DNA of 64,000 nt from Pelomyxa schiedti (taxonomy: Eukaryota; Protista; Evosea): positions 124,001 through 188,000 of the forward strand of contig JAHLWZ010000505.1 of the NCBI GenBank assembly GCA_020536535.1, written 5' to 3'. The position numbers and the translations under genes are program-made. Shown here piece by piece: positions 7,177-58,500 of this stretch. The number at the start of each line of letters is the position of its first letter. Position 1 is the first letter of the stretch. Under the pieces are notes generated by a model that made no database searches, was not told the DNA's origin, and saw nothing but the letters and a program-made list of their open reading frames with translations.

Positions 7177-8968
7177 TCAGGGAGCCGTGTGGAGGTACAC
7201 TGAGGCATCCCAGGAGCCGGAGAGCAGGCATGATCCATCAGGAGACATAGATACACAAGATACTCTGTTCTGGGCTACTGATGAACGCCATACTGGTTGG
7301 CCAGTCAACACACTCCACCCATTGATTTGGATGTCATCACTGCCGCAGAATAGGATGTGGCCGCTCAGCGAAAAGTCGGCTGAGGTCAGGCCGCCAGCGC
7401 TCCGTTCGTACATGAAGATATTTGCCAGCATGTTCTGCCTTATGTCATAAACGCGGCACCCAAGATCGTCTGCAAGTTTCAATTAGCAAATTTCATCTCT
7501 GATATCCGACACTTACCAGAGGCAGCTGCGAGCAGTGTTCCATTCGAGGAAAATGTTACACAGTTTACATCTGAATTGGCTCCAGCGAAAACAGTAATCG
7601 GCGTGGCCGGGCACCTGATATCATACAACGAAGTCAGGGCATTGCAGCCGCCAGTGGCAATGATGTTTGTATTCGCTGAGTTTACACAGACCGACATCAC
7701 ATCTGCCTCTCATGGAATCAGTGTGTTTAAGAGGTGTCACAGGAGAAAAAAAGAATACCGGATGTGGGTGTCTGAAGGTGGTTATCAAAGTGCTTGTTTC
7801 TACTTCGTGCAACATGCAGGACGAATCTCCTGACGCTGATAGTATCTGATTTTCGCTGAGGAACTTTATGCACGATACATATCCAGTGTGTTGTGAAAAC
7901 CGGTGGACAACTTCCCCAGACTGTCCAACTCTCTTGTGAACAGTGGTAGTATCTAAACAAGGAGGTATTTTTATGAAAAACTGTGAGGATGGTTTCTGCA
8001 TACTATCAAGACCACCAGATGCAACAAACTGGCACGATGGAGAAAGGGCACAGGCCATCACCCACGAAGATGCCAGGGTGATAGTATTTTCATGCGTAGC
8101 TGTTTGGTTTTCCCACCTCTGTGGAGGAATGATTCATTAGGTTCAAGAAAGCAGTTGAGTGACAAGGAACATACGTGAACCTGGACTGTGCCATCTTGTG
8201 AGGCAGAGGCAAACGTGTTACAATCACCCCAAGTGCAGGCATAAACTTTTGCATAATGCTTGGAAATACGCAGTGAATTCTTGAACCCGCATTTCCACCC
8301 TTTGGCACCGCCCAGAATACTGATCTTCGGGTTTTCAGATGGTTGTGAGTTGATCCCAGGCAGAAGAGAGCTTATCACAGCAACTGCCTTCTGAGCGATT
8401 CCGTAGGAACTCTTAATAGAGGCAGCAATAGACCCTTGTATAGCAGCGGGGTCCCTCCCCAACGTCACTCGACCACATGCCCCAAACCAACAAGGCAGCC
8501 CTCCTTTCAGTTCGTAAACCTGTCAGTTGATGTAAAGCCACAAATATATATATATATTGGTGCACCAGCACACGGCACGTGCGCGCAACTCAAACTCACA
8601 CAAGACCACGCACGTACCATCCTGTGCCACTTTTTGCACACGAGGACCAGCCTCATCATTGCCTCGAACAGTCCCAATTCATCCAGCAGCATTTGGCTCA
8701 TCAGCCCGCCGGCGGCCAGCACCCGCACCCTCGCCCTCTTGTCGGTGTAGTCCACAGGACTCTCGTGCCGTGCCGATTGCGCCGCAGTCGCAGTGGCGGG
8801 CGCGGTGGAGTCGACGGCAGCAGCACCGCCGTTGGTGCTGACGGGGGATGCCACGGCGGCAGTGTGGTCTGGTTCTTGTTGGTGCTGATGGGAAACGGCA
8901 TCGAGCCATGGCTTGCTCAGGACCATGGACAAAATCAGGTGCACAACGTCTTCGGGAAGGGTCTGCAT
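7177..8968 (-). CDS. F-box-like N-terminus fused to a G-protein beta-subunit-like WD40 propeller
   Basis: MQTLPEDVVHLILSMV...LVLVCKKWHRMV (interrupted F-box), then G-beta signature repeats HYAKVYACTWG..ASASQDG, VMACALSPSCQFVASGGLD, HTGYVSCIKFL..ILSASGDSSC, SDVNCVTF, GLTSADFSLSG, NRVSCVSMSPDG..SGSWD. Confidence 0.85.
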
Positions 8969-20930: not shown

Positions 20931-21150
20931 AAAACAACCTAGTACCCTTTTACAACGCCTAGCTCACCTTTCTTGTCGGTGGCCTGAACATTCTTGGTTT
21001 TTTTTATCAAAAAGCAGGAGCATGTGTAACTTTATTTTTATGATGTTATTCCTTGTTGGCAAGCAAAAAGTTACAGGTGGGGGTGGGACAGAGCTAAGGT
21101 GTAATCCCAATCGGGGACATTTCATTTCGAGTGATGCGTCCCACGGGGAG

Positions 21151-21259
21151 CGTACAACCGGCCGCGTGGTGTATTAGCCACTATACCACCCGACCCAGCG
21201 ATCGGTCGGGCTGGGAATCGAACCCAGGTCTCCACCTAGTAGTTAAGGCCGGCCGCACA
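21151..21259 (-). tRNA. Candidate circularly permuted tRNA gene (3' half upstream of 5' half); isotype unresolved
   Basis: Minus strand: GGTGG-AGAC-CTGGG TTCGATT CCCAG-CCCGACC-G (21236-21203), 7-nt linker, then GGTCGGG-TG-GTAT AGTGGCTA ATAC-A-CCAC (21195-21166). Perfect 7-bp acceptor, 5-bp T stem and 4-bp D stem; leader and trailer form a 13-bp helix with G-U pairs. No canonical anticodon loop could be reconstructed. Confidence 0.6.
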
Positions 21260-21624
21260 TTGACCGAAATCTCTCGTATTGGAGCTCCACCTAGTTGCCG
21301 ACTTGATTTTGGAAGGAAATGCCCTAAAGAGATTTGCCCGTAACTGAATTAGGGGACTCCCCCTTTTCGTTCACCCAGGCTGTTCCGCTGAACTTCGGCT
21401 GTTCCAGTGACCCCATATAAAAGGAAAAAAATGGCTTTTTGTCAAGCACCAAACTTTGAGTCGCATGTCGTTGTACGTGGGGTTGGCAACAAGGGCCACC
21501 CACGGCATGTTACTTTCTGCAAGTTCAAAAGAAAAGGGTTTCCGGAAAGGCCGTTGTTCGGGTCGGTTTTTTTCCTTGTTTTTCGTTTTTTTTTTCGTTT
21601 GAATCAACGAACCGTCGTGCGGTG

Positions 21625-23940
21625 ATGAGCGGTGTTGTTCACGTCCCTTTGTTCGCTGTAACGAGACTGGTGTCAAAGTTGGTCAAAGACACTCAGTCCT
21701 TGAAGGCTCCACCTACTGTACATCAACAACATCAAAACGCAAAACCAAAAACAAACGCCAACAAGGGGGACTTTTTTTGTTTGGCAAAGTTGTAACCAAT
21801 GGACTAGGCATTTACAGACCTAAGCAACACAATCAAGGATGTTGGTGTGGCAGTGAATGCAGCTAAAGGGGATACACACGCTGTTACTATTTGTCGAATG
21901 CACGAAGAACTCAAACTTATTGACGGGATTTTGAAACAATGGCCAAAGACTGATTGCACAGTGTGTAGTTTTCTTTGTGAACTGTCTACTTCTTGGGAGA
22001 AGTGAAACTAACTTCATGTCATTTTCTTTGATTCCTTCCAGAAGGATATTCAGGCATACAATTTGAAGCTTAAAACCCTTCTCGATGCCATGAAACCAAC
22101 TTCTTCTCTTTCATCTTCAGCTTCTTCTGTCACACAAACTTCAACTCCAATGACTGTGTCGCCAACGGAGGTCACACCAGTGACAAAATCGCAGTCTGAA
22201 CAGGCGCAAACTGTTCCAACAGCAACTCCTACTGCAGAAAGCACACCTACCATACCTGTTCCCACTGCACCTAACACATCAGATCTCCCTTCTACAGAGA
22301 CTGTTACGACTACACCTACTATCCCTCCCACTACTTCATCCCCCATGCCGACTCCTACTCTCAGTCCTCATCTCTCTCCCACTCCCGATCCTATTGCAAC
22401 CTCTGCTTCTACTCCCAGCACCCTTACTTATATTCCCAACGATCCCACTCCAACGCTTAATAAAAATCCGGACGCCAATCTCACTGTGAGCAGTCCCACC
22501 TCTACAACTACACCTAATGATGTACCTCCGACACAAATCTATGAACAGGCGTCCAGCTCAGTGCCTGAGGGTTCACTGTCACCCAAATCAACAGAGCCCA
22601 TTTCCACCCCCGAACTCCCTTCCAACTTAAACACCCCTCCACATGTTGATCCAGTAAGCAGCCCTTCTGCATCATCACCCGCCGTTACAATTGGCTCAGA
22701 GCCTACACCACCTCTCTCAGCATCAAAGCAAGAGGTGAATGCAAAGGATGCCATATTCCTTACCTATACACCACCCGTACCTGGAGTTGACACAACGGTA
22801 CCTTCGGCAATCACTGACAGCTCCACTGCAGCTTCAATACCGCAAAGCACTACCCCAAATCACAACACTGCATCTTCTGCTGAAGCGGAAATTACACGGA
22901 CACCATCACCAACTTTATGCATATTCTCACAGACTCCAGTAACAACAAGTCTAGATGTTCCAATAAATTTCATGCCATCTCAAATCACTGATCAAGTATG
23001 TAACCTCACGTTATCTCTTTATTGAAGTGCTGTAGGATGGGAGGCGATTTTGGTTAAGCCTATTTGGAGAAAAATCTCGGTATTTACATAATACAAAGGA
23101 GTAGCTGACTTATGTTTCTTTTTTTTTCTTTTTAGAGATGTCACAGAGAAAATATTTTGTATTGCCCTGACCAATCACTGCAAATTAACAAACCCCCAAA
23201 AGGAACAAGCAAGCAAAAGTACGGTTAGCTCTACAATTTACACACTATAACTTTTTCTGCTAGTTACTGGACGCGTTTATGTTGGTACCCTCGAAAAATT
23301 AATGAGGAAATTCACGTTTCAAGGGGTGCTGGGACTGCTCAATTGGTGCAATCCGTTTGAAAGCACTATCCCGGTAAGTCTTATTCTCGGAACTACTGTT
23401 TATTGACAAGTAAAAAAGGTGACTGATAAGGTGATGTTTGTTTGCGGTTTCCTTCCTGGAGTGCTTCAACCATGGAGTAAGTTTCCCACAAGGTAATATG
23501 CAAATACCTAAGAAGTGGAAAAAAAGACAACTCATCTGATGTGGGAGCAGCCGTAGTTGCAAGTAACCTTTGCAATGCCTCTCAGGACCAACTGTGGACA
23601 TTTAAGAATCACCACATTATCAACTGCAAGTCCAAATTGGCTCTTACTTTTGAAACTATACTTGAAATTGAGCCGGGAGGATGTCAGAGGATAGTCCTAC
23701 GAACGTATGACCCCGAATCCGAACTCCAGCAATGGTCTTTTGAAAAGGTCAGCTTCTTGCCAGAACTATCTCTACGTATCCAATTTTAAAAAACCCCTAC
23801 AGGACGGATCTATACGCTCTGTTGTCGATCCCAAGAGATTGGTGGACATTGACCGGGATTCCTCAGTAGCCATTCTCTGGTTTGCACGCCCCGGTGGTCT
23901 CAAACCCAACCAAACATTCATCATGCTACCCCACCTCTAA
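21625..23940 (+). CDS. Hypothetical protein: helical N-terminus, long Ser/Thr/Pro-rich linker, C-terminal ricin-B-lectin-like domain
   Basis: Spliceable exons from MSGVVHVPLF; 22063-23000 STP-rich exon; QxW-type repeats (SQDQLWTF, ELQQWSF, PNQTF) in the last exons. Confidence 0.6.
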
Positions 23941-36815: not shown

Positions 36816-36915
36816 NNNNNNNNNNNNNNNNNNNNNNNNNNNNNNNNNNNNNNNNNNNNNNNNNNNNNNNNNNNNNNNNNNNNNNNNNNNNNNNNNNNNN
36901 NNNNNNNNNNNNNNN
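36816..36915. other. Assembly gap (100 N, placeholder length)
   Basis: Run of exactly 100 N; the true distance across it is unknown. Confidence 0.99.
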
Positions 36916-38121: not shown

Positions 38122-39221
38122 TCAATAATTCAAAAAAGTGGATTTTTCGAGACAATCCTCTTTAAAATAATAATTCAAAACCAGCAAGAAAAAAATGAAT
38201 CTGGATCTGATGATTTTTATTTTTGCTCCGAAACTTGTGTGCAGTGGTACAGAGCTGGGAAGCCTCAGTTCAGACCAAAAACATGCCCATTGTGGTATCG
38301 AAGGACAGTACCATCGGTTGTACTGTCTCGCGGCGTGCTCTAAATGCGTTTTGCCTCGTCAGAAACCACGCTCAGATATAGGCAAATTTAAAAAAAAAAT
38401 TGGTTTGGCCGGGATCGAACCAGGTCTGTGGGGGTAAAAGCCGCGACTAAAACAAAACCACATTTTTTATTCTTTCAATCAGCTCTGGTCTGAGGCCCTC
38501 TGAAGGCATTTGCTCAGATATAAGCCAATCTCTCATGTCTTGCACAGTGAACTTTTTTTGTTCTGAGGTCACAATTCCTGCTTCCCACAGCACAATGAGT
38601 ACAGGTTTCTCAAAGTGGTGCTTAGGACTGTCTTGCTTGTGCTTGTTGGTGCACTTGAGCAGACTCAGTAATTTTGATCCAAGGATCTTGAGGTAGTCTC
38701 ACCTTAAAAATTTGGCAGATTTCCCTACTGCAGAGTTAGCTGAGCTATGGGAAAAAAAGCGGGGGAGGGGAAGGTGCCAAACAAAAAAAGTTCACTGTGC
38801 AAGACATGAGAGATTGGCTTATATCTGAGCAAATGCCTTCAGAGGGCCTCAGACCAGAGCTGATTGAAAGAATAAAAAATGTGGTTTTGTTTTAGTCGCG
38901 GCTTTTACCCCCCACAGACGTGGTTTGATCCCGGCCAAACCAATTTTTTTTTTAAATTTGCCTATATCTGAGCGTGGTTCCTGACGAGGCAAAACGCATT
39001 TAGAGCACGCTGCAAGACAGTACAACCGATGGTACTGTCCTTCGATACCACAATGGGCATGTTTTTGGTCTGAACTGAGGCTTCCCAGCTCTGTCCCACT
39101 GCACACAAGTTTCAGAGCAAAAATAAAAATCATCAGATCCAGATTCATTTTTTTCTTGCTGATTTTGAATTATTATTTTAAAGAGGATTGTCTCGAAAAA
39201 TCCACTTTTTTGAATTGTTGA
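38122..39221. mobile_element. Long-inverted-repeat (foldback/MITE-like) non-coding element
   Basis: Arms 38122-38562 and 38780-39221 (441/442 bp, about 9 substitutions + 1 indel) around a 217-bp unique spacer; no transposase and no clear TSD. Confidence 0.7.
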
Positions 39222-44649: not shown

Positions 44650-47600
44650 ATGCAAACAGTCCGAGCGGCACTGTCGCGAGCGATGATTGATGTCAAACCA
44701 CTTGAGGAACTGGACTTCGACTTGGATGTGGCTCCGTCTGACGAATTCATCTCGCAACTAGCTGACAATCGCGAGTTGATGGATGCGTCGTACTACAAGA
44801 ATGTCTTCGAAGCGGTAGTGAGTTTCCGTGCCGAAGCAGGAAAGGAAGATGATCAGTTGAGTCCGAAGTTGTCAGGTTCTTTTCACTTGTGAAAACATAT
44901 TTAACACACGACAACCACTCGGGTGGTTTTTTTTTACTGCTGAAATGACACAGAAATTGAGATGAGTGGTGCCTCAGATTCGTTGTGCCGAGCATTGAAG
45001 ACAATGGGGAAGCCCTGTACGGTGCCAGCCCTGCGGGAACTTCTGTCCATGCCTGAAATTCCACCTCCACTTTTGCAGGTTTTCAATTCCAAAAGAGGGT
45101 GGCTCCCAAAGCTTCGGCGGAGATTGGTCCCAAGGATCGACCCCGGAGGAACTCCGTCATCCAGAATAGATTCATTTCCAGGGAGGCTAACCGAGGCAGG
45201 ATTCCAGGATTTGGAAGACCTCGTTGGTTTGGATTCTGGTGACTTTCAAAGACTCACAGCATCACTGAAAATTCCAAAGGGAAGTGCATACAAAGTACTG
45301 CAGCAAGCAAAGGCCCTTGTTGGAGAGGGAAAAAAAGTGCTGTACCACACACTGGAAAATGCATCTGGACTCTACAGCTTGATCACCACCGTCAAAGAGG
45401 CACACAATGGAAACACAGTGAACAAGGTAACTCTTGTCACACAGAAGGTTGTGAATCTGATCAATATGATTCGTCGTGGCAGCTGTTCACCCAGCGGTGA
45501 CAGCATTGCCTTTGACAAACTTGGAAGTTTCGACTTTGTCACCATCGGGCTTTTTGGTGACCTCACTTTGATCACCAACTTCCTGGTGCGAATTGGCGCT
45601 TTTCCTAAAGGTCCGAAACTGCTTGCGAATAATGGTCAGGCAGAGATACACACCTTCATCACCCAGTTTGCAGAAGGATCTGAAATGAGAGGAAAGTCAG
45701 TGATGATTCTTGTCTTTGTTCCAGGGAGCACAAGCTTTTCCAACGTTCAGGAGTCTGATCCTGCGTGCCTCTTCTTGCGGTTTCTTTACAGTCTCTGTGA
45801 CAGGATTTTCATGTGCTTGTCTGAGCCAATGCTCGCTGAACTCCAAAACGAAACAGGAGAAGCTGAAACAACAAGGGTTGTTAAATGTGAAGTCGAGAAG
45901 AGGGCAATCAAAAAAGACAGGTGTGAGTTCCGGAAAGGCTTTGCCCAGAACCTCAGCCTCCCATCGTCAGATTCACCTTGGACAATGATCCAGGGGGATA
46001 ACAGGGTTGGTTTTGTCTGTTGTGAGGAAGTTGACGAGAGACTTGTGTATAACCCAAGCAAAGGACAGATTCCAGCTCTTTATTTTACGTCACAGTTCAA
46101 AAATTTGTTGGATAGGAGGGAGTTGTGCACTGACACACTCCCTTATCTCAACAAGTTAGCACTTCTTAGGTTGTTGAATCCCACTGCTGCCCAATCAGTT
46201 GAAGATGGAAACAAGGGGCCAATCAAGACTCTTCAGAGGGTTGCTAAAGATCAAATGAAACTGATGCTCATGGAACACTTCAAGCATGAGTGGGAACTGT
46301 TGCAGCTTGAAGCACCTCATTCACCGCGCAACTATTGTACTGCTTTGGACCAAACGAGGCTGAGAACTATTGTTGAGGCATGGCTTTCCAAAACAACCTC
46401 AGTCGTTTTTCTCTTTGAGGAGTTTTGCCCTGATAAAACCGAAAGTCAACTCCGCGATTTCTTGAGTCTCACAGAACAGGAAATGAAGCAGAGAATCATG
46501 CAATTTGCAAGTGACCCACCAAGACCCCACGTGACACTTGCCACTCTTTCGTACTTTGTGTTCGAACCACACTTCATCTCAGAAATCACTTCCATGTTGG
46601 AAAAGAAATTTATGTCTCAGTGCAAATCGCTCGTCAAAGAAATGCAAGCTGCTGTGTGCAACAACCCTGATGCATTTTGCATTGGGTCACCATTTTCTTT
46701 GGAGCTGGACACCGCAATCCGCAAAGAAACTCCACACACAAACCCTGAAAAAGTGATGCTGACTATGTTCCAACAGTCGACTGACAAGGCAAACCCACTG
46801 GTGAGTTTCCATTTTCAGATGGCTGGTAAAGTTCCACGACACTTGAAGTCCACAGTTGTGGAAATAAGTTTGGAGAAGAAGGCAACTGATGGGTGTTCCA
46901 ATGTCACTCTCGCACCTCCTTTTTGTTTTGATTTGGACGTGGTCACCGTTCTTGGCTCTTTCCTGTTATCTGGAAGCAAGGTGATGGTTATCGGTGTTGA
47001 TGCTGCCAACCCTTCAAATTACCTCATCTGCATCCACCATGAGGGCATATGCTCCCTCAGTTCGAAACTGCCAAAGAAAGGTGGCATTTCACAAGTCAAC
47101 TTTTGTGCAACAACGAGAATTCTGGTGATGTGTTACTCCTCACCCGATTCCAGTGTCTGTGCTCTGAAGTTCAATGACGCATATTCGAAATTTGACAACC
47201 TGGGCAGTTTCCCGCTTGACAACGATGCCGCTCTTGCGAGTGTGAAGGGAATTTTCCCAGTTCCAGAAGGACAAAAGGTTGTGGTCACATTCCCAACAGT
47301 GGCCAAGCTCTTTGACTTCGAGAACAGAACTATATCAGAGTTGCCACAACTTGATGGTCCTGCACTTTTCCTCGGTCCAGAGTTCTTCGTCACTGTGAAA
47401 CCGTCACTTCCCGTCACTTCAGGAACACTTGGTGATGAGGGGGGATCGTGCGTTGTTTCTGTGAGGAGTTGCCTGCAACCCTGCAAAGTTCAGAACTGGG
47501 AAACAAACCTCCTGAACTCACACCTGTTGCCCTCAACACTTCTGGCAAATTTTCGTGTTGGTGGTGCACAAGAATTGCATTTGGTTCAATTCAACCCCAC

Positions 47601-50600
47601 CACTGGTCACGTTTCCTCTGTTGTTTTGTTTGCTGTGATGAAACAGACAAAGTTCACACTTCAGATGGCCTCACAAACAACTCGTCCATCACGGTCGCTC
47701 TTGGAATACCTGCATCTCACCTTTGACAAGTTCCCAATCACAGCCTTTTGTGGTGTTGCAATGGAAGAGAAACCACACAAGTTGACGGTTGTGGTGCCAT
47801 CAGCAACACCTGAAACAAAGAGACTGATCTCCAAGCGTCTGGGGGAATACAAAGAGAAGATTGCTGGTCTTTTCAAAACACTTGGCACAGCTGACAAGTT
47901 CTTCACTGAACATGTGACTTGCAGCATTGATCAAGGATGGATTGAGACCGAACCGCTCCAACCAACAGGGTTTGGAACGTGGCTGAAAACACTCATTTCA
48001 CTCGTTCCTGTTCAAATTGCTCGTGTTGACAACAACTGTTTGGTGTTGTGCAACAACAATTTATCTTCACAGGGAAATGATACGATTCAGTTCGCACAAA
48101 CCCAACACAGTGTTGCAGAGGGAATTTCGTTTGGACTCCTCGACGCGATTTTCTCATCATGTTTGAGCAAACCAGTTCTTGTTGTCACATCGATGGGAAA
48201 ACAGAGCACAGGGAAGAGTTACACTCTCAACCACCTCTTGGGTGTTCTCTTTGACATCTCTGGTGGGAGGTGCACTGATGGTTGTTGGATGAGCGTTCGC
48301 GAGAAATCTGACCACTTGATCGTGGCCTTGGATTTTGAAGGACTTTGCTCTCTGGAACGTTCTGAGCAGGAAGATATTCTCCTTTCTCTGTTGAATGCAT
48401 CTGTTTCAAATTTGACACTTTTCAAGACTGAATTCAGGATTGATCGGGAAACAGAAAGAATGTTCAGGAACTTCCAAGAGGGTGTTGGAATGTTGAAAGG
48501 GGATGACAAACTCTTCAAGGGTTGTTTCACCCTCATGGTAAAAGATGTACCTGGGAGGGACATTGACAGTTTATTTTCAGAATTCGAGTCCAAGTTTTCT
48601 AGAATTGTGGAAACCAACCAGGGGCAAAACTTTCTTTCTCAAATGTTTCCAGGGAAGTTCACAATGATTATGTGTTCCCCACTCGGAACCCCTAAATATA
48701 ACGATAGCTTGAAGTGCTGTGCCAAAAGACTGCGGAAGCAGACACCACAGTTCCGAAGTGGAGGAGAGTTCTCCTCGATGCTCAAACTGATTCTTGCGAA
48801 GTTACACTTGAAAGACTGGTCTTCTCTCTTGGGACAAGACATGGTGATTATGGTTCGAAATCTTGAAGAGGATCTCAGTTTGGCTGTATCTTGCGGGAGC
48901 AAGTCAGCAGCCACAGGTCACCAGGGACAACTTGTGAATTTGTCAACTGGGGAAGTCGTTACCCGCCTCGAATCAGTCACAATCTCCGGTCTCAGTATTC
49001 TCATTCCGAACTTCAATTTACAGGCAGATCACGAGGCAGATTTCACCAGGATACAGGACGAGTTCAAGTGTTGCTTTGAGAGATATCTCCCAAAACCACT
49101 GAAGCAGAGCGATTTCAGAAAGTGGCACAGCCAATTCAGTGATTTTGTGCACCAGGTCATTGAGAGCAGGAAGAGGCATGTGAAAGATTGGGTATATTCA
49201 AATATGAATAGGTGTCCTAGTTTCTGCACTGCAACCAATCCTGGCTCTGTCCCCTTTCGGAACGAATGCCCTGAAGTCAAAGTATTTTTGATGATAGTGG
49301 AGTCTTCGTTGCGAGGACTGGATGCACTCGAGGTTTGTTCAGACACATGCGCTCGGTGTCGGTTTCCGTGTTTACTTCTGTCTCGGCATTCAGGACAACA
49401 CAACTGCAATGGATCTCACAAGTGTGAAGCAGAGTGCACTTATTGCAAGTCCGCGGGCACGTGCGCCTACCAGGCCGGCCACGACGGCGATCACGACTGC
49501 ACAAGAGGCCACAAATGCAACCAGGGCTGCACTCTCTCGTGCAAAACAGGTTGCAACAGATTCTGCTCTCGTGTTGTCAATCATGAAGGTCCGTGCATGT
49601 GCAATTCGCAGCAACACCTGTGTGGTGACAAATGCTCTGCTCGAGGGTCATCAGAACACTGTGACAAAATGTGTACACTTCCTTACGACCATCATCAAAA
49701 TCATTTCTGTGGGAGGAGGCACTGCCTGCACAGTTGCAGCTTCCCAAAGTGCACAAATCAATGTGCATCTACAGATCATTTTCATGGGAACGAGGCTTCG
49801 GCTTCAGCCTTCCCACACTTATGTGGCTCTGAGCACGACTGTCAATCAGAGTGCGAGTTACCTGGCTGGTGCATTGTTGGATACTTTCAGAAGGTGGAAA
49901 AAGTTTCATACAATGGGCACAGGCAAAATTTTGTTTATGAGAGGTCCACCGTTCCAGAACCAAGAAAGCTCCCTTGCTGCAAAAGGGTGCCACCAGGGCA
50001 GCAAGTCCACGAGGGCTCTCACTCTTGCACTTATCCACAATCTGACCATCGTTGCAAACACTCGTGCCCAACCTGTGGTTATATTTGTGAACTTGAGTTT
50101 GGACACCAGGAGCAGCATGCAGCGGCACACGGAAACATGATCAAAACACAATTTGTTTCCAGTGGCAAAGACATTGACCTTGATGGTCGTTTGTATGAAG
50201 CCGGTGAACCAGGCGCGGCGGAGCTCTGCAACTTGTTCTGCAACAAACTTGGCAGGCACATTCACATCCTCCCGTGCACAGCGGAGGGCAATGAGCCCTG
50301 TTCTCACACTGGAGAAGGAGGCATAAGGCACGCCACAACAAAGTACCTGCCGGATCCGGATAATCCAAAGGACGAGCTCACACATGAAGGTTACTGGAAT
50401 GCAATTGGTTTCTGTGACCCTTGCACGCCTGAACACAGGGAGATTTTCAAATTGTGCAACTTTGAGTGTGGCGAAAATCGCCACACTGATCCCCGGTGTC
50501 GTTGCATGCTCCCTCTTTGGCATGAACCTTGTACCTTACAAGCCAATGAATCCGAAACTCTCAAAGACGGAAGGGTTGGTTTTGCGTCATCCGATGGACA

Positions 50601-51480
50601 CATATTCCCCAAAAAGCATGGACCCCCAGAAAACATGCACATCGTTTTATGCCTTGACGCATCCACATCCATGTTGAGACGCAACCGGTGGGAAACTCTT
50701 GTGAGAGGTGTTGAACAGTTCATTTCTGCCAGAAACAAACCAAAGGATGTTTACAGCATTATTCTGTTCCACGGTCAGGGAATTATTGCCTGTGACAGGG
50801 TATCACCTGAGCAAGCCCAGACCAGAATCACCATGGAACCTCATTTTGGGGGAGACACCAAGTTTTCAAGTGGTCTGTCATTTGCCTATCGTCAACTCAT
50901 GGAAACCGACTGGTGAGTCCTTTTTACCTTACTTTTGGCATGTTTTTCACCAAAAACAAAAAGGGATGAGTACCGGGCTGCTCTCATATTTATGTCGGAT
51001 GGAGAGGATGAGAACTCAGAATGGGAAAGCAGCATGCTGAACATCAAGCAGCTTGCAGAGCAAAGACCGCATGCGGTTTCAACTTTCGTGGTTGGAATCG
51101 GCAATGGCTTCAACACCAAAAAGCTTCAAAGTGTTGCCACAACCGGGGAGGCACAGTTTCTCACAGTCGACGCCGTGTGTGCAAATCTGACAGCAGTGTT
51201 AAAAGGCATAGATGCCAAGGCACAGCTAGTGGCTTTGATGCCCCCATTGATCCACACCACTGCACAACAGCCCAGTGTACAGGCACCCACATCCACGTCC
51301 ACGTCCACGTCCGCATCCGCATCCGCATTCCAATTTGCATCAGCATCCATTTTCCCATCCAGTTCCACTGGCACCTCTGGCTCCATTTCAAGAACCAAAT
51401 ACACATCCACACGCTCATCCACACCCACGTCGCCTCTGGTTCATGACTTCACAACGAGGAAGAACGGTGGCACCTCCTGA
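44650..51480 (+). CDS. Giant VLIG/GBP-like GTPase with SAM-like, Cys/His-rich and vWA modules, copy 2 (~2233 aa)
   Basis: Predicted join(44650..44875,44954..50912,50964..51480), in frame. G1 MGKQSTGKS, G2 GGRCTDG, G3 LDFEGL; SAM-like LTEAGFQDLEDLVGL; about 450 aa of C/H-rich repeats; vWA LDASTSM..DTKFSSG..FMSDG. Confidence 0.9.
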
Positions 51481-51813: not shown

Positions 51814-54800
51814 ATGCAAACGGTCCGGGAGGCACTCTTGCGGGCGAAGATCGATGTCAAACCACTCGAAGATCTGCACTTCGATTTGGATGTGCCTCTC
51901 TCTCACGATTTCGTCAGGCAACTTGCTGAAAATTGCGAGGACATGGACGCTCCGTACTACAAAACCGTCAGCGACGAGGTTGTGCGTTTTCTTTCCGAGA
52001 AACGAAATGACGATGACCAGTTGAGGGATACGTTGAGAGGTTCCTTTCACGTTCTTTTAAAAATTTGACACGTGAAGCTAGTGTGTTTAACACAAATGAG
52101 AAATAGAAATTGGGATGGATGGTGCCTCAGATTCGTTGAGTGGAGCATTGGAGACTCTGGGAAAACCCTGCACGGTGGCAGTCCTGAGGGAGGTTCTTTC
52201 TCTGCCTGAAATTCCACCTCCACTTGCGCATGTTTTCAATTCCAAAAGAGGGTGGCTTCCGAAGCTTCGGCGGAGATTGGTTCCAATGATCGACCCCGGA
52301 GGAACTCCATCATCCACTGTCGATTCATTTCCAGGGAAGCTGACCGAGGCAGGATTCCAGGATTTGGAAGACCTCGTTGGTTTGGATTCTGGTGACTTTC
52401 AAAGACTCACAGAGTCACTGAAAATTCCAAGGGGGAGTGCAAACAAACTGTTGCAGCAATCAAAGGCCCTCGTTGGAGATGGAAAAAAAGTGTTGTACCA
52501 CACATTGAAAACTGCCTCTGTATTCAATGGCCTGATCACCACTGCACAAGAGGCACAGAACGGAAACACAGCGAACAAGGTAACTCTTGTCTCAGAGAAG
52601 GTTCTGAATCTGATCAACATGATTCGCCGTGGTTGCTGTTCACCCAGCGGTGACAGCATTGCCTTTGACAAACTTGATGAAGGTTTTGTCACCATTGGGC
52701 TTTTTGGTGACTTGAGAGTGGTAATTGACTTCCTGGTGCGAATTGGTGCTCTTCCCGAAGGCAAGAAACTCCCTGAGAACAATGGTCAGGCAGAGATACA
52801 TGCCCTCACAACGCAATTTTCAGAAGAATCTGAAATGAGAGGCAAGCCAGTGATGATCCTCGTGTTTGTTCCAGGGAGCACAAGCTTTTCCAACGTTCAG
52901 GAGTCTGATCCTGCATGCCTCTTCTTGCGGTTTCTTTACAGTCTCTGTGACAAAATTTTCATGTGCTTGTCTGAGCCAATGCTCGCTGAACTCCAAAACG
53001 AAACAGGAGAAGCTGAAACAACAAGGGTTGTTGAATGTGAAGTCGAGACGCCATCAATACAAGATAGGTGTGAGTTCGAGAAAGGGTTTGCTCAGAACCT
53101 CAGCCTCCCATCGTCAGATTCGCCTTGGAAAATGATCCAATGTGATAACAGTGTTAGTTTTGTCTGTTGTGAGGAAATCAATGAGAGCACGCTTGTTTCC
53201 CCTATTAGAGGCCAGATCCCTGCCTATTACTTCGCGCCCCATTTCAAGGATTTATTGCACGGTAAGGAACTGTGCACTGACGCTCTATGTTATGCCAAGA
53301 AGTTGGCACTCCTTCGATTGCTAAATCCCACTGCAGCCCAATCAGTTGAAGATGGAAACAAGGGCCCACTCAAGACTCTTCAGAAGGTTGTAAAACTGAT
53401 GGTAGTGCAACACTTCCAGCACGAATGGGAGCTCTTGAACCTTAAAGCACCTCATTCACCGAGCGGTAGTCGCGTTGTCCTGGACCAAACGAGGCTGAGA
53501 AATACTGTCGAAACATACCTTTCACAGACAACCTCAGTCGTTTTTCTCTTTGAGGAGTTTTGCCCCGTTAAAACCGAAAGTCAACTCCGCGATTTCTTGA
53601 GTCTCACAGAACACGAAATGAAACAAAGAATCACTTCATCTGGGAGTGAGGCACCAAGACCCCACATTCCACTTTCCACTCTTTCATCCTTAGGGTTTGA
53701 GCCACACTTTGTCTCTGAAATCACTTCCCTGTTGAAAAGGAAATTTATGTCTCAGTTTGAAGCACTCATCAAAGAAATACAAGCTGCTGTGTGCAACAAC
53801 CCTGATGAATTCTGTGGTGGAACATCATTTTCTTTGGAGCTGGACACTGCAATCCGCAAAGAAACTCCACACACAACACCTGAAAAAATGACCCTGACAG
53901 TGTTCCAGCAGTCGACTGACAAGGCAAACCCACATGTTAGTTTTGATTGTCAGATGGCTGTAAAATTGCCGCGGCACATGAAGTTCACAGTTGTGGAATC
54001 AAATATGGAGAAAACTGCTGGATTTTCCAATGTCACCCTTGCACCTCCTTTTTGTTTTGATGTGGACGTGGTCACCGTTCTTGGTTGTTTCCTGTTGCCT
54101 GGAAGCAAGGTGATGGTTGTTGGTGTTGACGCCGAAGACCCTTCAAATTACCTCATCTGCATCCATCACGAAGGCACACGCTTCCTCAGTTCGAAACTGC
54201 GAAAGAAAGGTGGCATTTCACAAGTCAACTTTTGTGCAACAACGAGAATTCTGGTGATGTGTTACTCCTCACCCGATTCCAGTGTCTGTGCTCTGAAGTT
54301 CAACGACTCATATTCGAAATATGACAACCTGGGCAGTTTCCCGCTTGACAACGATGCCGCTCTTGCGAGTGTGAAGGGAATTTTCCCAGTTCCAGAAGGG
54401 CAAAAGGTTGTTGTGACATTCCCAACAGTGGCCAAGCTCTTTGACTTCGAGAACAGAACTATATCAGAGTTGCCACAACTTGATGGTCCTGCACTTTTCC
54501 TCGGTCCTGAGTTCTTTCTCACTGTGAAACCGTCACTCCCCGTTGTTTCCGGCACGGTTTGTGAGAGGGAATCGTGCCATGTTTCTGTGAGAAGCTGCCA
54601 CAATCCCTCAATTGTTCAGAACTGGGAAACAAATCTTCTGGACTCTTGCCTGTTGCCCTCAACACTTCTGGTAAATTTTCGTGTTGGTGAAGGGGCACAA
54701 GAGCCTCATTTGATCCAATTCAATCCCACATCAGGTGAGATCTCCTCGGTGATCTTGTGTGCTGTGATGAAACACACAAAATTCTCACTTCAGATGGTGG

Positions 54801-57800
54801 CACCAGTGAGTCGGCCTTCATGTTCACCATTGAAATACTTGTTGGATGCCTCGAGTAAGTTTCCAATCACAGCCGTTTGTGATGTTGCACGGGAGGAGAA
54901 ACCACACAAATTGACTGTTGTGGTGCCATCAGCAACACCCGAAGCCAAGAGACTTGTATCCAAGCGGCTCCAGGAATACAAAGACAAACTTGTCCGTCTT
55001 TGCAAAACCCTTGGCACAGCTGACAAGTTCTTCACTGAGCATGTGACTTGCAGCATTGATCAAGGATGGTTTGAGATCGAACCGCTCCGATCCGTTGAGT
55101 TTGGAACGTGGCTGAAAACACTCATTTCACTCGTTCCCATCCAAATCGCCCGCGTCGACAACAACTGCTTGGTGTTGTGCAACACTGCATCTTCACAGGG
55201 AAAGACTGTGCGCGACAGCACTTCCCAACAAAATCTTGTAAATTTTACCCAAACCCAACACAGTGTTGCAGAGGGGATTTCGTTTGGACTCCTCGACGCG
55301 ATTTTCTCATCATGTTTCAACAAACCAGTTCTTGTTGTCACATCGATGGGAAAACAGAGCACAGGGAAGAGTTACACTCTCAACCACCTCTTGGGTGTTC
55401 TCTTTGACATCTCTGGTGGGAGGTGCACTGATGGTTGTTGGATGAGTGTTCGCGAGTATTCTGATTGCTTGATCGTGGCTTTGGATTTTGAGGGCCTTTG
55501 CTCACCAGAGCGTTCTGAGCAGGAAGACATTCTGCTTTCTCTGTTGAATGCATCTGTTTCCAACCTGACTCTTTTCAAGCTAGAATTTAGGATTGATAGG
55601 GAGACAGAAAAAATGTTCAGGAACTTCCAAGAGGGTGTTGGAATGTTGAAAGGGGATGACAAACTCTTCAAGGGTTGTTTCACTCTCATGGCAAAAGATG
55701 TTTCTGAAAGAGACATTGAAAGTTTATCTTCAGAATTCAACATCAAGTTTAAGAACATTGTGGAAACTAACCAGGGGCAAAACTTCCTTTCTCAAATGTT
55801 TCCAGGGAAGTTCACAATGATTATGTGTTCCCCACTCGGAACCACTGGATATAACGATAGCCTGATCAGCTGTGCCGAAATTCTACGGAAGCAGACACCA
55901 CAGTTCCGAAGTGGAGGAGAGTTCTCCTCGATGCTTAAGCTGATTTTAGCGAAGTTACACTTGAAAGACTGGTCTTCCCTCCAGGGACAAGACAGGGTGA
56001 TTATGGTTCGAATGCTCCAGGAACAGCTCCCATGGGCTGTCTCTTGTGGCAGCAAGTCAATATCCAGTGGCCATGAGGGACAACTTGTGAATTTGTCAAC
56101 TGGGGAGGTCGTTCCCCGCCCAGAATCGGTCACCATCTCTGGTGTCGGCATTCCCATTCCGAACTTCAATCTGCAAGCAGACCGTGAGGCAGATTTCACC
56201 AGGATAAGAGATGAGCTCAAGTGTCGTTTTGAGAATTATCTTTCAAAACCACTGAAGCAGAGTGATTTCAGGCCATGGCACAGCCAATTCAGTGATTTTG
56301 TGCACCAGGTCATTGAGAGCAGGAAGAGGCATGTGAAAGATTGGGTCTGTTCAAACACGAACAGGTCGCCTGCTTCTGTTCCTCCTCAGGACGAATGCCC
56401 TGAAGTCCAAGCATTTTTGGCTACAGTGGAGTTTTCGTTGCGAGGACTGGATTCACTCGAGGTTTGTTCAGACACGTGCACTTGGTGTCGGTTTCCGTGT
56501 TTACTTCTGTCTCGGCATTCAGGACAACACAACTGCAATGGATCTCACAAATGTGAAGCTGAGTGCACTTATTGCAAGTCCGCGGGCACGTGCGCCTATC
56601 CGGCAGGTCACGATGGTGATCACAACTGTGCAAGAGGTCACAAATGCAACCAGGGCTGCACTCTCTCGCGCAAAACAGGTTGCAATAGATTCTGCTCCCT
56701 TGTTGTAAATCACTCCGGCCCATGCATGTGCAATTCGCAGCAACACCTGTGTGGTGAAAAATGTTCCGCTTGTGGACCAGAAAGACCCTGTGGTGAGCCG
56801 TGCGCACTCCCTTGTGAAGATCATCGAAAACACGACTGCGGGAGGAGGCGCTGCCTGCACAGTTGCAGTTTCCCAAAGTGCACAAATCCATGTGCATCTA
56901 CAGACCACTTTCACGGGACTGCCGTCTCGGTTTCAGTATATCCACACTTGTGTGATAAAGAGCACGACTGTCAATCAGAGTGCGAGGTGCCTGGTTGGTG
57001 CCGTGTAGAATACATTCAGAAGGTGGAGAATCTTTCATACAATGGGCACAGGCAAAGTTTTGTTTATGAGAGGTCAACTGTTCCAGAACCAAGAAAGCAC
57101 TCTTGCTGCAAAAGGGTGCCACCAGGGCGGCAAGTCCATGAGGGATCTCACTCTTGCACTTATCCACAATCTGACCATCGTTGCAAACACTCGTGCCCAA
57201 CCTGTGGTTATATTTGTGAACTCAATTTTGGGCACCCTGGCAAGCATGCAGCGGCACACGGAAACATGATCAAAACACAATTTGTTTCCAGTGGCAAAGA
57301 CATTGACCTTGATGGTCGTTTGTATGAAGCCGGTGAACCAGGCGTGGCGGAGATCTGCAACCTGTTCTGCAACAAACTTGGCAGGCACATTCACATCCTT
57401 CCGTGCACAGCGCAGGGTGATGGGCCCTGCGTTCACACAGGAGCAGAAGGTCGAAGGCACGCCACCGTAAGGTATCTTCCAGATTCAAATATTCCGAAGG
57501 ATGAGCTCACACACGAGAGCTACTGGAATTCAATTGGATTCCGCGATCCCTGCACGGCTGAACACAGGGAGATTTTCAAATTGTGCGACTTTGAGTGTGG
57601 CGAAAATCGTCACACTGATCCTCGGTGCAGGTGCATGCTCCCTCTTTGGCACGCACGTAGTTCCTTACAAGTCAATGAATCCAAACAGTTCGAATGTGGG
57701 AAATTTGGTTTTGCATCATCCGATGGACACATATTCCTCAGGAAGCATGGACCCCCAGAAAACATGCACATCGTTTTATGCCTTGACGCATCCACATCGA

Positions 57801-58500
57801 TGAATAGACGTAGCCGGTGGCAAACACTTGTGAGAGGTGTTGAACAGTTCATTTCTGCCAGAAACAAACCAAGGGACGTCTACAGCATTGTCCTGTTCCA
57901 CGGTCAGGGAATTGTTGCCTGTGACAGGGTGTCACCTGACCAGGCCCGGGCTAACATTACCAGGGAACCTCATTTTGGGGGAGACACCAAGTTTTCAAGT
58001 GGTCTGTCAGTTGCGTATCGAAAGCTCATGGAGACTGACTGGTGTGGTTTTGTTGACTTTCTTTTGGCATTGTTGTTCACCAAACAAAAAGGTCTGACTA
58101 CCGTGCTGCTCTTATATTTATGTCGGATGGCGAGGATGAGAACTCGGAATGGGAAAGCAGCATGCTGAATATCAGGCAGCTCGCACATCAAAGAACTCTT
58201 TCAACTTATGTGATTGGAATCGGTGATGGCTTCAACTCCAGAAAGCTGCGAAGCGTTGCCGAAACCGGGGGTGCTCAGTTCGTTGCAGTCGACGCTGTGT
58301 GCACAAATCTGGCAACGGCCCTGCAGACAATTGACTCCAGAGCAGGGCAACCAGTTGCTTTGATGAATCCATTGCTAAACCTGAATCCGCCTCCCACTGC
58401 ACAACTCCGTGTGCGGGAGGCCACCTCCACTCCCACTTCCTACCCCACTTCATGCTTCACAGATCTGAGAAATTCGACAAAGAAAGGTGGCACCTCGTGA
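51814..58500 (+). CDS. Giant VLIG/GBP-like GTPase-Cys-rich-vWA protein, copy 3 (~2189 aa)
   Basis: Predicted join(51814..52039,52107..58041,58092..58500), in frame; same motifs and intron positions as copy 2. Confidence 0.9.

What the first reader, a model, noticed from the sequence alone, without database searches (positions are those of the whole stretch)
21151..21259. Circularly permuted tRNA gene candidate in a non-algal protist
Seen, minus strand 5'->3': leader TGTGCGGCCGGCC-TTAACTACTA, then the 3' half GGTGG AGAC CTGGG TTCGATT CCCAG CCCGACC G, a 7-nt linker ATCGCTG, then the 5' half GGTCGGG TG GTAT AGTGGCTA ATAC A CCAC GC, and trailer GGCCGGTTGTACG. The acceptor (7/7), T stem (5/5) and D stem (4/4) pair perfectly. 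U8, A14, G15-C48, G18G19, A21, G53, T54T55C56, A58 and C61 are all present. CCAC pairs with GTGG (anticodon stem), and leader and trailer form a 13-bp helix, the geometry expected of a permuted precursor. Established: permuted tRNA genes, matured through a circular intermediate by the splicing endonuclease and RNase P/Z, are known from Cyanidioschyzon merolae, some prasinophytes, a chlorarachniophyte nucleomorph and Thermofilum; I know of none in Amoebozoa. Caveat: I could not build a clean bulge-helix-bulge or a canonical Y-U-NNN-R loop. A 37/38 junction gives anticodon GCC with G33 and a G31:G39 mismatch; the leader TT-AAC hints at Val. It may therefore need extra processing, trans-splice with another half, or be a relic.
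Basis: partly seen in the sequence, partly recalled or inferred. Interest (0 to 1): 0.9.

Follow-up and report, generated by a model that had tools for sequence, protein, structure and literature searches.

The report
Back-to-front tRNA-like gene in Pelomyxa
The amoeba Pelomyxa schiedti carries a flawless tRNA body whose back part is written before its front part and which is clamped by a 13-base-pair stem, but no cut-and-join rebuilds a normal anticodon arm, so it is more likely a tRNA-shaped small RNA or an off-type family member than a working tRNA.

Summary
On the minus strand at 21151-21259 the sequence reads: leader, tRNA positions 30-73, a 7-nt linker, positions 1-29, trailer. The acceptor (7/7), T (5/5) and D (4/4) stems and the conserved tertiary bases are all intact. 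A 13-bp leader/trailer helix brackets the unit.

The host is Pelomyxa schiedti: the neighbouring gene is its annotated Sec31. The locus is intergenic and occurs once in the window. Earlier notes of this scan report about ten other permuted tRNA loci on other DNA of this genome, so the kind is not new to the scan. I could not read those loci.

At this copy the anticodon arm cannot be rebuilt canonically:
- A 29/30 junction gives a perfect 5-bp stem, but a 10-nt loop with U37.
- I found a bulge-helix-bulge (BHB) of canonical geometry in a second register of the leader/trailer helix. Splicing there gives a 7-nt loop (U33, A37, UGU), but 10 bp too far from the body. This register is 12 kcal/mol less stable and has a chance rate of about 1-6%.

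The closest Rfam match is YrlA (Y RNA-like), well below threshold, and the Ro60-binding motif is absent. No transcript evidence could be retrieved. My best reading (0.4) is a non-decoding, tRNA-shaped RNA from a permuted tRNA-derived gene. Rivals are a relic, an odd decoder and a BHB-circularised product.

The parts
21247..21259 (-). Leader strand of the 13-bp leader/trailer helix. Its last two bases (C21248, C21247) can instead serve as tRNA positions 30-31.
21237..21246 (-). TTAACTACTA: a 10-nt unpaired stretch. In the 29/30 reading it is an anticodon-like loop (UUAAC-UA plus a CTA triplet repeat; U33 present, U37 abnormal).
   Evidence: upstream partial duplicate without the extra CTA
21232..21236 (-). 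3' strand of the anticodon stem (G39-G43).
21211..21231 (-). 4-nt variable loop AGAC, then the T arm (CTGGG TTCGATT CCCAG). The T arm holds the B-box-like GGTTCGATTCC.
   Evidence: (Rfam tRNA local match to the T arm)
21203..21210 (-). 3' strand of the acceptor stem (66-72) plus discriminator G73.
21196..21202 (-). 7-nt linker ATCGCTG that closes the acceptor stem. It has no T run.
   Evidence: known intervening sequences are 1-74 nt (PMC3978253)
21171..21195 (-). 5' strand of the acceptor stem (1-7), U8 G9, and the D arm (GTAT AGTGGCTA ATAC) with the A-box-like TGGTATAGTGG.
21166..21170 (-). A26 and the 5' strand of the anticodon stem. C27 C28 A29 pair with U41 G42 G43. The next C (21166) pairs with G40 and is either position 30 or the first trailer base.
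21151..21165 (-). Trailer: GC unpaired, then GGCCGGTTGTACG, the second strand of the 13-bp helix.
21149..21164 (-). Trailer side of the alternative BHB register: H1 21164-21159, central helix 21158-21155, bulge UA|C 21154-21152, H2 21151-21149.
21250..21265 (-). Leader side of the alternative BHB register: H2' 21265-21263, central helix 21262-21259, bulge GU|G 21258-21256, H1' 21255-21250.
21285..21295 (-). Exact 11-nt copy of ACTAGGTGGAG (loop end, 3' anticodon stem, start of the variable loop) 55 nt upstream. With the preceding A it reads AACTA-GGTGGAG, without the extra CTA.
   Evidence: leader versus 3' part alignment, 1 of 500 shuffles reaches the observed score
21065..21069 (-). First T run (T5) downstream, 82 nt after the trailer helix. 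It is a candidate RNA polymerase III terminator.
   Evidence: read directly

Best explanation
This is a real, intergenic, single-copy, tRNA-derived gene unit of Pelomyxa schiedti. tRNA positions 30-73 are encoded before positions 1-29 on the same strand. A 7-nt linker closes the acceptor stem, and the whole unit is clamped by a 13-bp leader/trailer helix. It is therefore a circularly permuted tRNA-type unit.

I infer that this copy does not make a decoding tRNA. It would make a tRNA-shaped small RNA: T arm, closed acceptor stem and D arm sitting on a long terminal stem that replaces the anticodon arm. That is the layout of bacterial YrlA-type Y RNAs. RNase P and RNase Z could open it at the acceptor loop, since it has a full 7-bp acceptor stem and a T arm. 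The two pieces would then stay held together by the terminal helix.

Shown here: the sequence anatomy, the pairing, the strand-specific helix, the host species and the intergenic position. Inferred: transcription, any cleavage and the non-decoding role.
For: - The body is flawless: 20 of 20 Watson-Crick stem pairs and all conserved tertiary bases. ARAGORN accepts it after re-ordering, and accepts 0 of 1000 shuffles.
- All four non-Watson-Crick pairs of the 13-bp helix are G.U on the tRNA-sense strand. On the other strand they would be A/C mismatches. This argues for pairing kept at the RNA level in this orientation (read; about 1/16 by chance if decay were by transitions).
- No junction restores a canonical anticodon arm.
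- U37 is shared with the older upstream partial duplicate, so it is not a recent lesion.
- From general knowledge of identity elements, G73 fits neither candidate anticodon (Val AAC/UAC or Thr UGU).
- The best Rfam match to the whole unit is YrlA, aligned end to end with the same topology (20.8 bits, E 0.08).
- The Mycobacterium smegmatis YrlA, which has a 7-bp acceptor stem, is cut by RNase P and receives CCA (PMC4201824). A closed-acceptor tRNA mimic processed this way therefore has precedent.
Against: - There is no evidence of transcription for this locus.
- The YrlA score is far below the gathering score of 69, and the Ro60-binding motif GNCGAAN0-1G is absent.
- I could not test whether P. 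schiedti has a Ro60 homologue. None is encoded next to the locus.
- There is no TATA-like element within 50 bp upstream, and the first T run lies 82 nt downstream.
- Earlier notes read most sister loci of this genome as decoding tRNAs with matching anticodons. If that holds, this copy could simply be a disabled member.
- A 5-bp stem closing a UUAAC-containing loop at exactly the 29/30 junction is what a decoder ancestry predicts.
Confidence: 0.4

Rival explanations
1. It is an inactive relic: a young, disabled copy of one of the permuted tRNA genes of this genome, or the product of a local rearrangement. Its anticodon loop was spoiled by a CTA triplet duplication and U37.
For: - The loop is 10 nt and contains a tandem CTACTA. 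The upstream partial duplicate lacks the extra CTA.
- No transcript-derived record could be found.
- There is no nearby TATA-like element or terminator.
- A second, clearly degenerate tRNA-like element lies in the same window.
Against: - All visible defects sit in the 10-nt loop. About 60 constrained body positions and a 13-bp helix are intact.
- The four G.U pairs, all on the sense strand, suggest continued selection on the RNA.
- U37 predates the duplication, so the loop has been off-type for some time without decay of the body.
Confidence: 0.25
2. It is a working permuted tRNA gene with its junction in the anticodon stem (29/30 or 30/31). An unknown nuclease removes leader and trailer at the top of the helix, a ligase joins the ends into a circle, and RNase P and RNase Z remove the linker. 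The product would be a Val-like tRNA (AAC or UAC) with an enlarged loop.
For: - Joining A29 to C30 gives a perfect 5-bp stem (C27-G43, C28-G42, A29-U41, C30-G40, C31-G39) and a loop that starts UUAAC, with U33.
- The re-ordered sequence has a strong fold (z = -3.6). Its minimum-free-energy structure keeps the acceptor, anticodon and T stems but replaces the D stem with an alternative pairing; the full cloverleaf lies 3.1 kcal/mol above it.
- Earlier notes report the same 29/30 junction at Gly, Asp and Gln loci of this genome (s1-386709, s1-377880, s1-377909). I did not check these.
Against: - The loop has 10 nt (8 in the minimum-free-energy fold), and position 37 is U.
- G73 does not fit Val.
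- No BHB of either orientation can be drawn at 29/30 or 30/31.
- No known enzyme cuts at such a site.
Confidence: 0.15
3. The tRNA-splicing endonuclease cuts a canonical BHB formed in a shifted register at the base of the leader/trailer helix, after 21153 and before 21256. The ligase then closes the unit into a circle. After RNase P and RNase Z act, the product is a 97-nt tRNA-like RNA with a composite long arm that ends in a 6-bp stem and the 7-nt loop GUUGUAG (U33, A37, 'UGU').
For: - The geometry is exactly canonical: H1 of 6 bp, a 3-nt bulge, a 4-bp central helix, a 3-nt bulge and H2 of 3 bp. The cuts fall at the equivalents of 37/38 relative to H1.
- With the palindromic cores kept and the outer flanks shuffled, a motif this good arises in 2.4-5.8% of trials, and in 0.7% with U33 and a purine at 37.
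- All known permuted tRNA precursors use a BHB, most often at 37/38 (PMC3978253).
Against: - This register is 11.9 kcal/mol less stable than the 13-bp register under nearest-neighbour rules.
- H2 consists of G.U, C-G and U.G only.
- The resulting loop sits 10 bp beyond the normal place, behind a 14-nt asymmetric internal loop.
- No second BHB would remove the extra segment.
- G32 and G38 are unusual, and G73 does not fit Thr.
Confidence: 0.15
4. It is an artefact or a trivial rearrangement: a chimera from whole-genome amplification or misassembly, or a truncated tandem pair of ordinary tRNA genes.
For: - The assembly comes from multiple-displacement-amplified single-cell DNA (PMC8887013).
- Only one contig carries the region.
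Against: - The halves abut exactly.
- The 7-nt spacer has no terminator.
- The flanks carry no remnant of the missing halves.
- A 13-bp flanking helix with sense-strand G.U pairs is not what a chimera or a truncation would produce.
- Similar loci are noted elsewhere in the genome.
Confidence: 0.03

Closest known systems
Circularly permuted tRNA genes of Cyanidioschyzon merolae, prasinophyte green algae, the Bigelowiella natans nucleomorph and Thermofilum pendens (Soma et al. 2007; review PMC3978253)
   Same: The 3' part lies upstream of the 5' part on one strand. A short intervening sequence (7 nt here; 1-74 nt known) closes the acceptor stem and has no terminator inside it. Leader and trailer pair with each other. 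The body is intact, so RNase P and RNase Z could open it.
   Different: - The host is an amoebozoan.
- The halves meet at 29/30 in the anticodon stem. Known junctions are 20/21, 37/38, 50/51 and 59/60.
- There is no BHB at that junction. The only BHB lies 10 bp further out, in a less stable register.
- The anticodon loop cannot be rebuilt canonically.
- There is no TATA-like element within 50 bp, and the T run is 82 nt downstream.
YrlA, the tRNA-mimicking bacterial Y RNA (Rfam RF02553; Chen et al. 2014, PMC4201824)
   Same: It has the same topology from 5' to 3': terminal helix strand, variable-loop equivalent, T arm, acceptor-like stem closed by a loop, D arm, terminal helix strand. The 7-bp acceptor stem matches the M. 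smegmatis YrlA, which is cut by RNase P and receives CCA. YrlA is the best Rfam match to the whole unit.
   Different: - The score is 20.8 bits against a gathering score of 69.
- The Ro60-binding motif GNCGAAN0-1G is absent.
- The host is eukaryotic.
- No Ro60 gene lies next to the locus.
- The body is far more tRNA-like than in YrlA, with every stem perfect.
tRNA introns bounded by a BHB, and the circular RNAs made from them (archaeal and eukaryotic tRNA splicing)
   Same: The shifted register gives two 3-nt bulges separated by 4 bp next to a 6-bp stem. Cutting there would circularise the tRNA-like module.
   Different: The motif is not the stable fold, and the stem it adjoins is not at the position of a real anticodon stem.

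Membership tests
Circularly permuted tRNA gene (Soma type) | The 3' part is encoded upstream of the 5' part on the same strand, separated by a short intervening sequence with no promoter or terminator. | tested here: met
   Positions 30-73, a 7-nt linker, then positions 1-29 on the minus strand. There is no T run inside the unit. The known range is 1-74 nt.
Circularly permuted tRNA gene (Soma type) | Joining the two parts gives a complete canonical cloverleaf, including a 7-nt anticodon loop with U33 and a purine at 37. | tested here: not met
The acceptor, D and T arms and the 5-bp anticodon stem are canonical.
Circularly permuted tRNA gene (Soma type) | Leader and trailer form a BHB at the junction. 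| tested here: inconclusive
One of canonical geometry exists in a shifted register. Its chance rate is 2.4-5.8%, and it is 11.9 kcal/mol less stable than the 13-bp register.
Circularly permuted tRNA gene (Soma type) | A TATA-like element within about 50 bp upstream, and a T stretch downstream of the 5' part. | tested here: not met
   The nearest TATA-like run (TTTTATAT, 21422-21415) is about 155 nt upstream of the helix. The first T5 (21069-21065) is 82 nt downstream. RNA polymerase III signals of Pelomyxa are unknown.
Circularly permuted tRNA gene (Soma type) | A circular intermediate and a mature CCA-tailed tRNA are detected. | not testable with these tools
   No transcript-derived record for this locus could be retrieved.
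YrlA / Y RNA | A T arm, a closed acceptor-like stem and a D arm nested in a terminal helix. | tested here: met
   end-to-end alignment to RF02553.
YrlA / Y RNA | The Rfam RF02553 gathering score (69 bits) is reached. | tested here: not met
   20.8 bits, E 0.08 in a 601-nt search. There was no hit at gathering thresholds.
YrlA / Y RNA | The conserved Ro60-binding motif GNCGAAN0-1G is on the 5' strand of the terminal helix. | tested here: not met
   The aligned segment reads GGCCG--G, and no such motif occurs in the leader. The motif is taken from PMC4201824.
YrlA / Y RNA | A Ro60 (TROVE) protein is encoded in the genome, and next to the RNA gene in bacteria. | not testable with these tools
   The neighbours are Sec31 and an unannotated 596-aa gene. 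The proteome could not be searched by organism. No note of the scan mentions Ro60 or TROVE.
Ordinary tRNA gene (Rfam RF00005 / ARAGORN) | Detected in the native order. | tested here: not met
   ARAGORN finds 0 genes in the window. Rfam finds nothing at gathering scores and only a local T-arm match of 13.8 bits.
tRNA-derived SINE or retrocopy | Several copies, an A-rich tail and target-site duplications. | tested here: not met
   The locus is a single copy in 64 kb by covariance model and by pattern search. There are no flanking direct repeats or A tail.

The most novel reading that the evidence does not exclude
Pelomyxa schiedti expresses a family of back-to-front tRNA units that are processed without the classical BHB at the junction. 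One possibility is a new way of cutting and joining inside the anticodon stem. The other is two-piece or closed tRNA mimics. In the second case this locus would be the first eukaryotic counterpart of the bacterial YrlA-type tRNA-mimicking RNAs.
Probability: 0.25. Interest if true: 0.85.

Novelty: new variant of a known kind. Interest (0 to 1): 0.6.

Why it matters
Permuted tRNA genes are known only from a few algae, one nucleomorph and one archaeon, and there they always carry a BHB at the junction. A permuted tRNA-type unit in an anaerobic amoeba whose parts meet inside the anticodon stem leads to one of two conclusions. Either the phenomenon extends to a new eukaryotic supergroup and needs a different maturation route, or eukaryotes also make closed-acceptor tRNA mimics of the kind so far seen in bacterial Y RNAs. 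Either outcome can be tested directly with small-RNA and circular-RNA assays on an organism that is already in culture.

Tried and rejected
- Enumerating every cut and join of the two parts with ARAGORN. Nearly any junction is accepted because the body is so good, so the test does not discriminate.
- Looking for transcript-derived or independent assemblies through ORFs that overlap or flank the locus and through word-based protein searches of two frames. Nothing was on record, which says little about expression.
- A protein search with a Sec31 exon failed because of the tool's length filter. The search against representative proteins succeeded and gave the organism.
- Two metagenome scans. The exact permuted junction had 0 hits. 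The 5' part with its D arm had 5 hits, all chance matches with no tRNA.
- A search for a second BHB that would remove the extra arm segment found only noise.
- A search for remnants of lost tRNA halves in the flanks. A TCCCACCCCCACC stretch just before the T5 run resembles positions 60-72, but not significantly (10% of shuffles score as high in the local alignment; 9% of genomic control segments and 24% of shuffles in the gapped alignment).
- A covariance model of the module found no second copy in the window. The hit at 8744-8826 (E 0.05) lacks a T loop.
- The 8-nt direct repeat GCGGCCGG in leader and trailer is explained by the palindrome CGGCCG, so it is not evidence for a tandem duplication.
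- A look-up of the scan's findings by sequence returned nothing.

Full report
**Observation.** From 5' to 3' it holds:
- a leader (TGTGCGGCCGGCC);
- a 10-nt stretch, TTAACTACTA;
- the 3' strand of an anticodon stem, a 4-nt variable loop and a perfect T arm;
- the 3' acceptor strand with G73, and a 7-nt linker;
- the 5' acceptor strand, U8 G9 and a perfect D arm;
- A26, CCAC, GC and a trailer (GGCCGGTTGTACG).

All 20 stem pairs of the tRNA body are Watson-Crick, and the usual tertiary bases are in place. ARAGORN and Rfam see no tRNA in the native order. ARAGORN calls a tRNA when the two parts are re-ordered, and in none of 1000 shuffles.

**Host and context.**
- The neighbouring gene is KAH3761854.1, 'secretory protein Sec31 [Pelomyxa schiedti]', on contig JAHLWZ010000505.1 of GCA_020536535.1.
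- The locus is record position 145151-145259. It lies about 610 nt beyond the Sec31 stop and about 370 nt before the next annotated gene, on the opposite strand. It is therefore intergenic.
- It occurs once in the 64-kb window.
- The genome paper does not mention tRNA. No paper I could search links permuted tRNAs with Pelomyxa or other amoebae.
- Earlier notes of this scan list about ten other permuted tRNA-like loci on other pieces of this genome. I could not read those sequences, so they are leads only.

**The flanking helix.**
- Leader and trailer form 13 contiguous pairs, 9 Watson-Crick and 4 G.U.
- Helices of that length with 70-100 nt loops occur about 15 times per strand in the window over 31 loop sizes. 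I estimate that one sitting exactly on the flanks of the module has a chance of about 1e-3.
- All four wobble pairs are G.U on the tRNA-sense strand and would be A/C mismatches on the other strand. This points to pairing kept at the RNA level in this orientation.
- The two parts abut without gap or overlap, and the flanks hold no remnant of the 'missing' halves. A truncated tandem pair is therefore unlikely.

**The anticodon arm is the problem.** I found three possible reconstructions.
2. A junction at 29/30 uses the last two leader bases as C30 and C31. It gives a perfect 5-bp stem (C27-G43 to C31-G39) closing the loop UUAACUACUA. That is a Val-like UUAAC start with U33, but the loop has 10 nt and position 37 is U. 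Earlier notes proposed this junction for sister loci.
   - An exact 11-nt copy of ACTAGGTGGAG lies 55 nt upstream; only 1 of 500 shuffles reaches that alignment score.
   - With its preceding A it reads AACTA-GGTGGAG, without the extra CTA.
   - So the CTA repeat is a later slip, while U37 is older.
3. A BHB of exactly canonical geometry forms if the palindromic cores (CGGCCG in both leader and trailer) pair in a register shifted by four.
   - It has H1 of 6 bp, bulge GU|G, central helix GUUG/CAAU, bulge UA|C and a weak 3-bp H2.
   - Cutting there and joining would close the helix into a 6-bp stem with the 7-nt loop GUUGUAG (U33, A37, 'UGU').
   - That hairpin sits beyond the CCAC/GUGG stem and a 14-nt asymmetric internal loop, about 10 bp too far from the body.
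   - No second BHB would remove the extra segment.
   - With the cores kept and the outer flanks shuffled, such a motif arises in 2.4-5.8% of trials, and in 0.7% with U33 and a purine at 37.
   - The register is 11.9 kcal/mol less stable than the 13-bp helix.

From general knowledge of identity elements, G73 and the 4-nt variable loop AGAC resemble Asp-type tRNAs. They fit neither Val nor Thr.

**Comparison with known families.**
- *Permuted tRNA genes.* Known examples have junctions at 20/21, 37/38, 50/51 or 59/60, a BHB at the junction, intervening sequences of 1-74 nt, a TATA-like element within 50 bp and a downstream T stretch (PMC3978253). This locus matches in gene order, linker and leader/trailer pairing. 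It fails on the canonical loop and the promoter and terminator spacing, and is inconclusive on the BHB.
- *YrlA.* The best Rfam match to the whole unit is YrlA, the bacterial tRNA-mimicking Y RNA, aligned end to end with the same topology (20.8 bits, E 0.08). The gathering score (69) is not reached, and the Ro60-binding motif GNCGAAN0-1G is absent. It therefore resembles a YrlA in layout but is not a member.
- *A point from the YrlA paper.* The M. smegmatis YrlA has a 7-bp acceptor stem, is cut by RNase P and receives CCA. The 'cut exactly at position 1' reported by earlier notes for sister loci therefore does not separate a mimic from a true permuted tRNA.

**Expression.** I could retrieve no transcript-derived record.
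- Exact look-ups of overlapping and flanking ORFs failed.
- Two word-based searches of locus translations failed.
- Two metagenome scans gave nothing relevant.

These blanks are weak evidence either way.

**Verdict.**
- The permuted, clamped tRNA body is real and is very probably kept by selection at the RNA level. All oddities are confined to the stretch that would be the anticodon loop, and one of them (U37) is old.
- I therefore favour a non-decoding, tRNA-shaped RNA from a permuted tRNA-derived gene (0.4).
- The rivals are a young relic (0.25), an off-type decoder joined at 29/30 (0.15), a BHB-circularised long-arm product (0.15) and an artefact (0.03).
- The kind of locus has been found before by this scan on other DNA of the same genome.
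- What this locus adds is the shifted-register BHB, the strand-specific wobble pairs, the dated U37 and an explicit YrlA membership test.

Noticed in passing
window 38390-38470 (-), flanked by 38375-38390 and 38510-38525: A degenerate tRNA-like element in the ordinary order. It has a 5' acceptor-like GGTTTTG, a CTTTTAC loop (Lys-UUU-like, with C32, U33 and A37), AGAC, a 4-bp T stem with TTCGATC, CCAAACC-A and then T10. It has no D arm. It is flanked by near-identical direct repeats (GGCTTATATCTGAGC and GCCTATATCTGAGC), which suggests an inserted or retroposed unit. Rfam and ARAGORN do not call it.
   Followed up: partly
window 21285-21295, 21230-21240 and 21707-21717 (-): ACTAGGTGGAG occurs twice exactly, 55 nt apart, and a third time with one mismatch about 420 nt further upstream. 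The upstream exact copy resembles an A box (TAGGTGG) about 65 nt before the B-box-like T loop. In a 269-nt fold it pairs with CCACCUG next to the T5 run, but that fold is not better than shuffles (z = -0.67).
   Followed up: partly
window 21076-21088 (-): TCCCACCCCCACC, 6 nt before the T5 run, resembles tRNA positions 60-72 of the locus (11 of 13). It could be a relic of an ancestral 3' end with its terminator, but the match is not significant (10% of shuffles score as high in the local alignment; 9% of genomic control segments and 24% of shuffles in the gapped alignment).
   Followed up: yes
window 36816-36915: A run of 100 N: a scaffold gap inside the window.
   Followed up: no
window 44962-50916 and 52115-58168 (+): Two adjacent, uninterrupted ATG-started ORFs of 1984 and 2017 aa in an otherwise intron-rich region. 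The first is not on record as an exact protein.
   Followed up: no
window 8744-8826 (+): A weak match (14.7 bits, E 0.05) to the covariance model of the permuted module. It is GC-rich and has no T-loop motif, so it is probably noise.
   Followed up: partly
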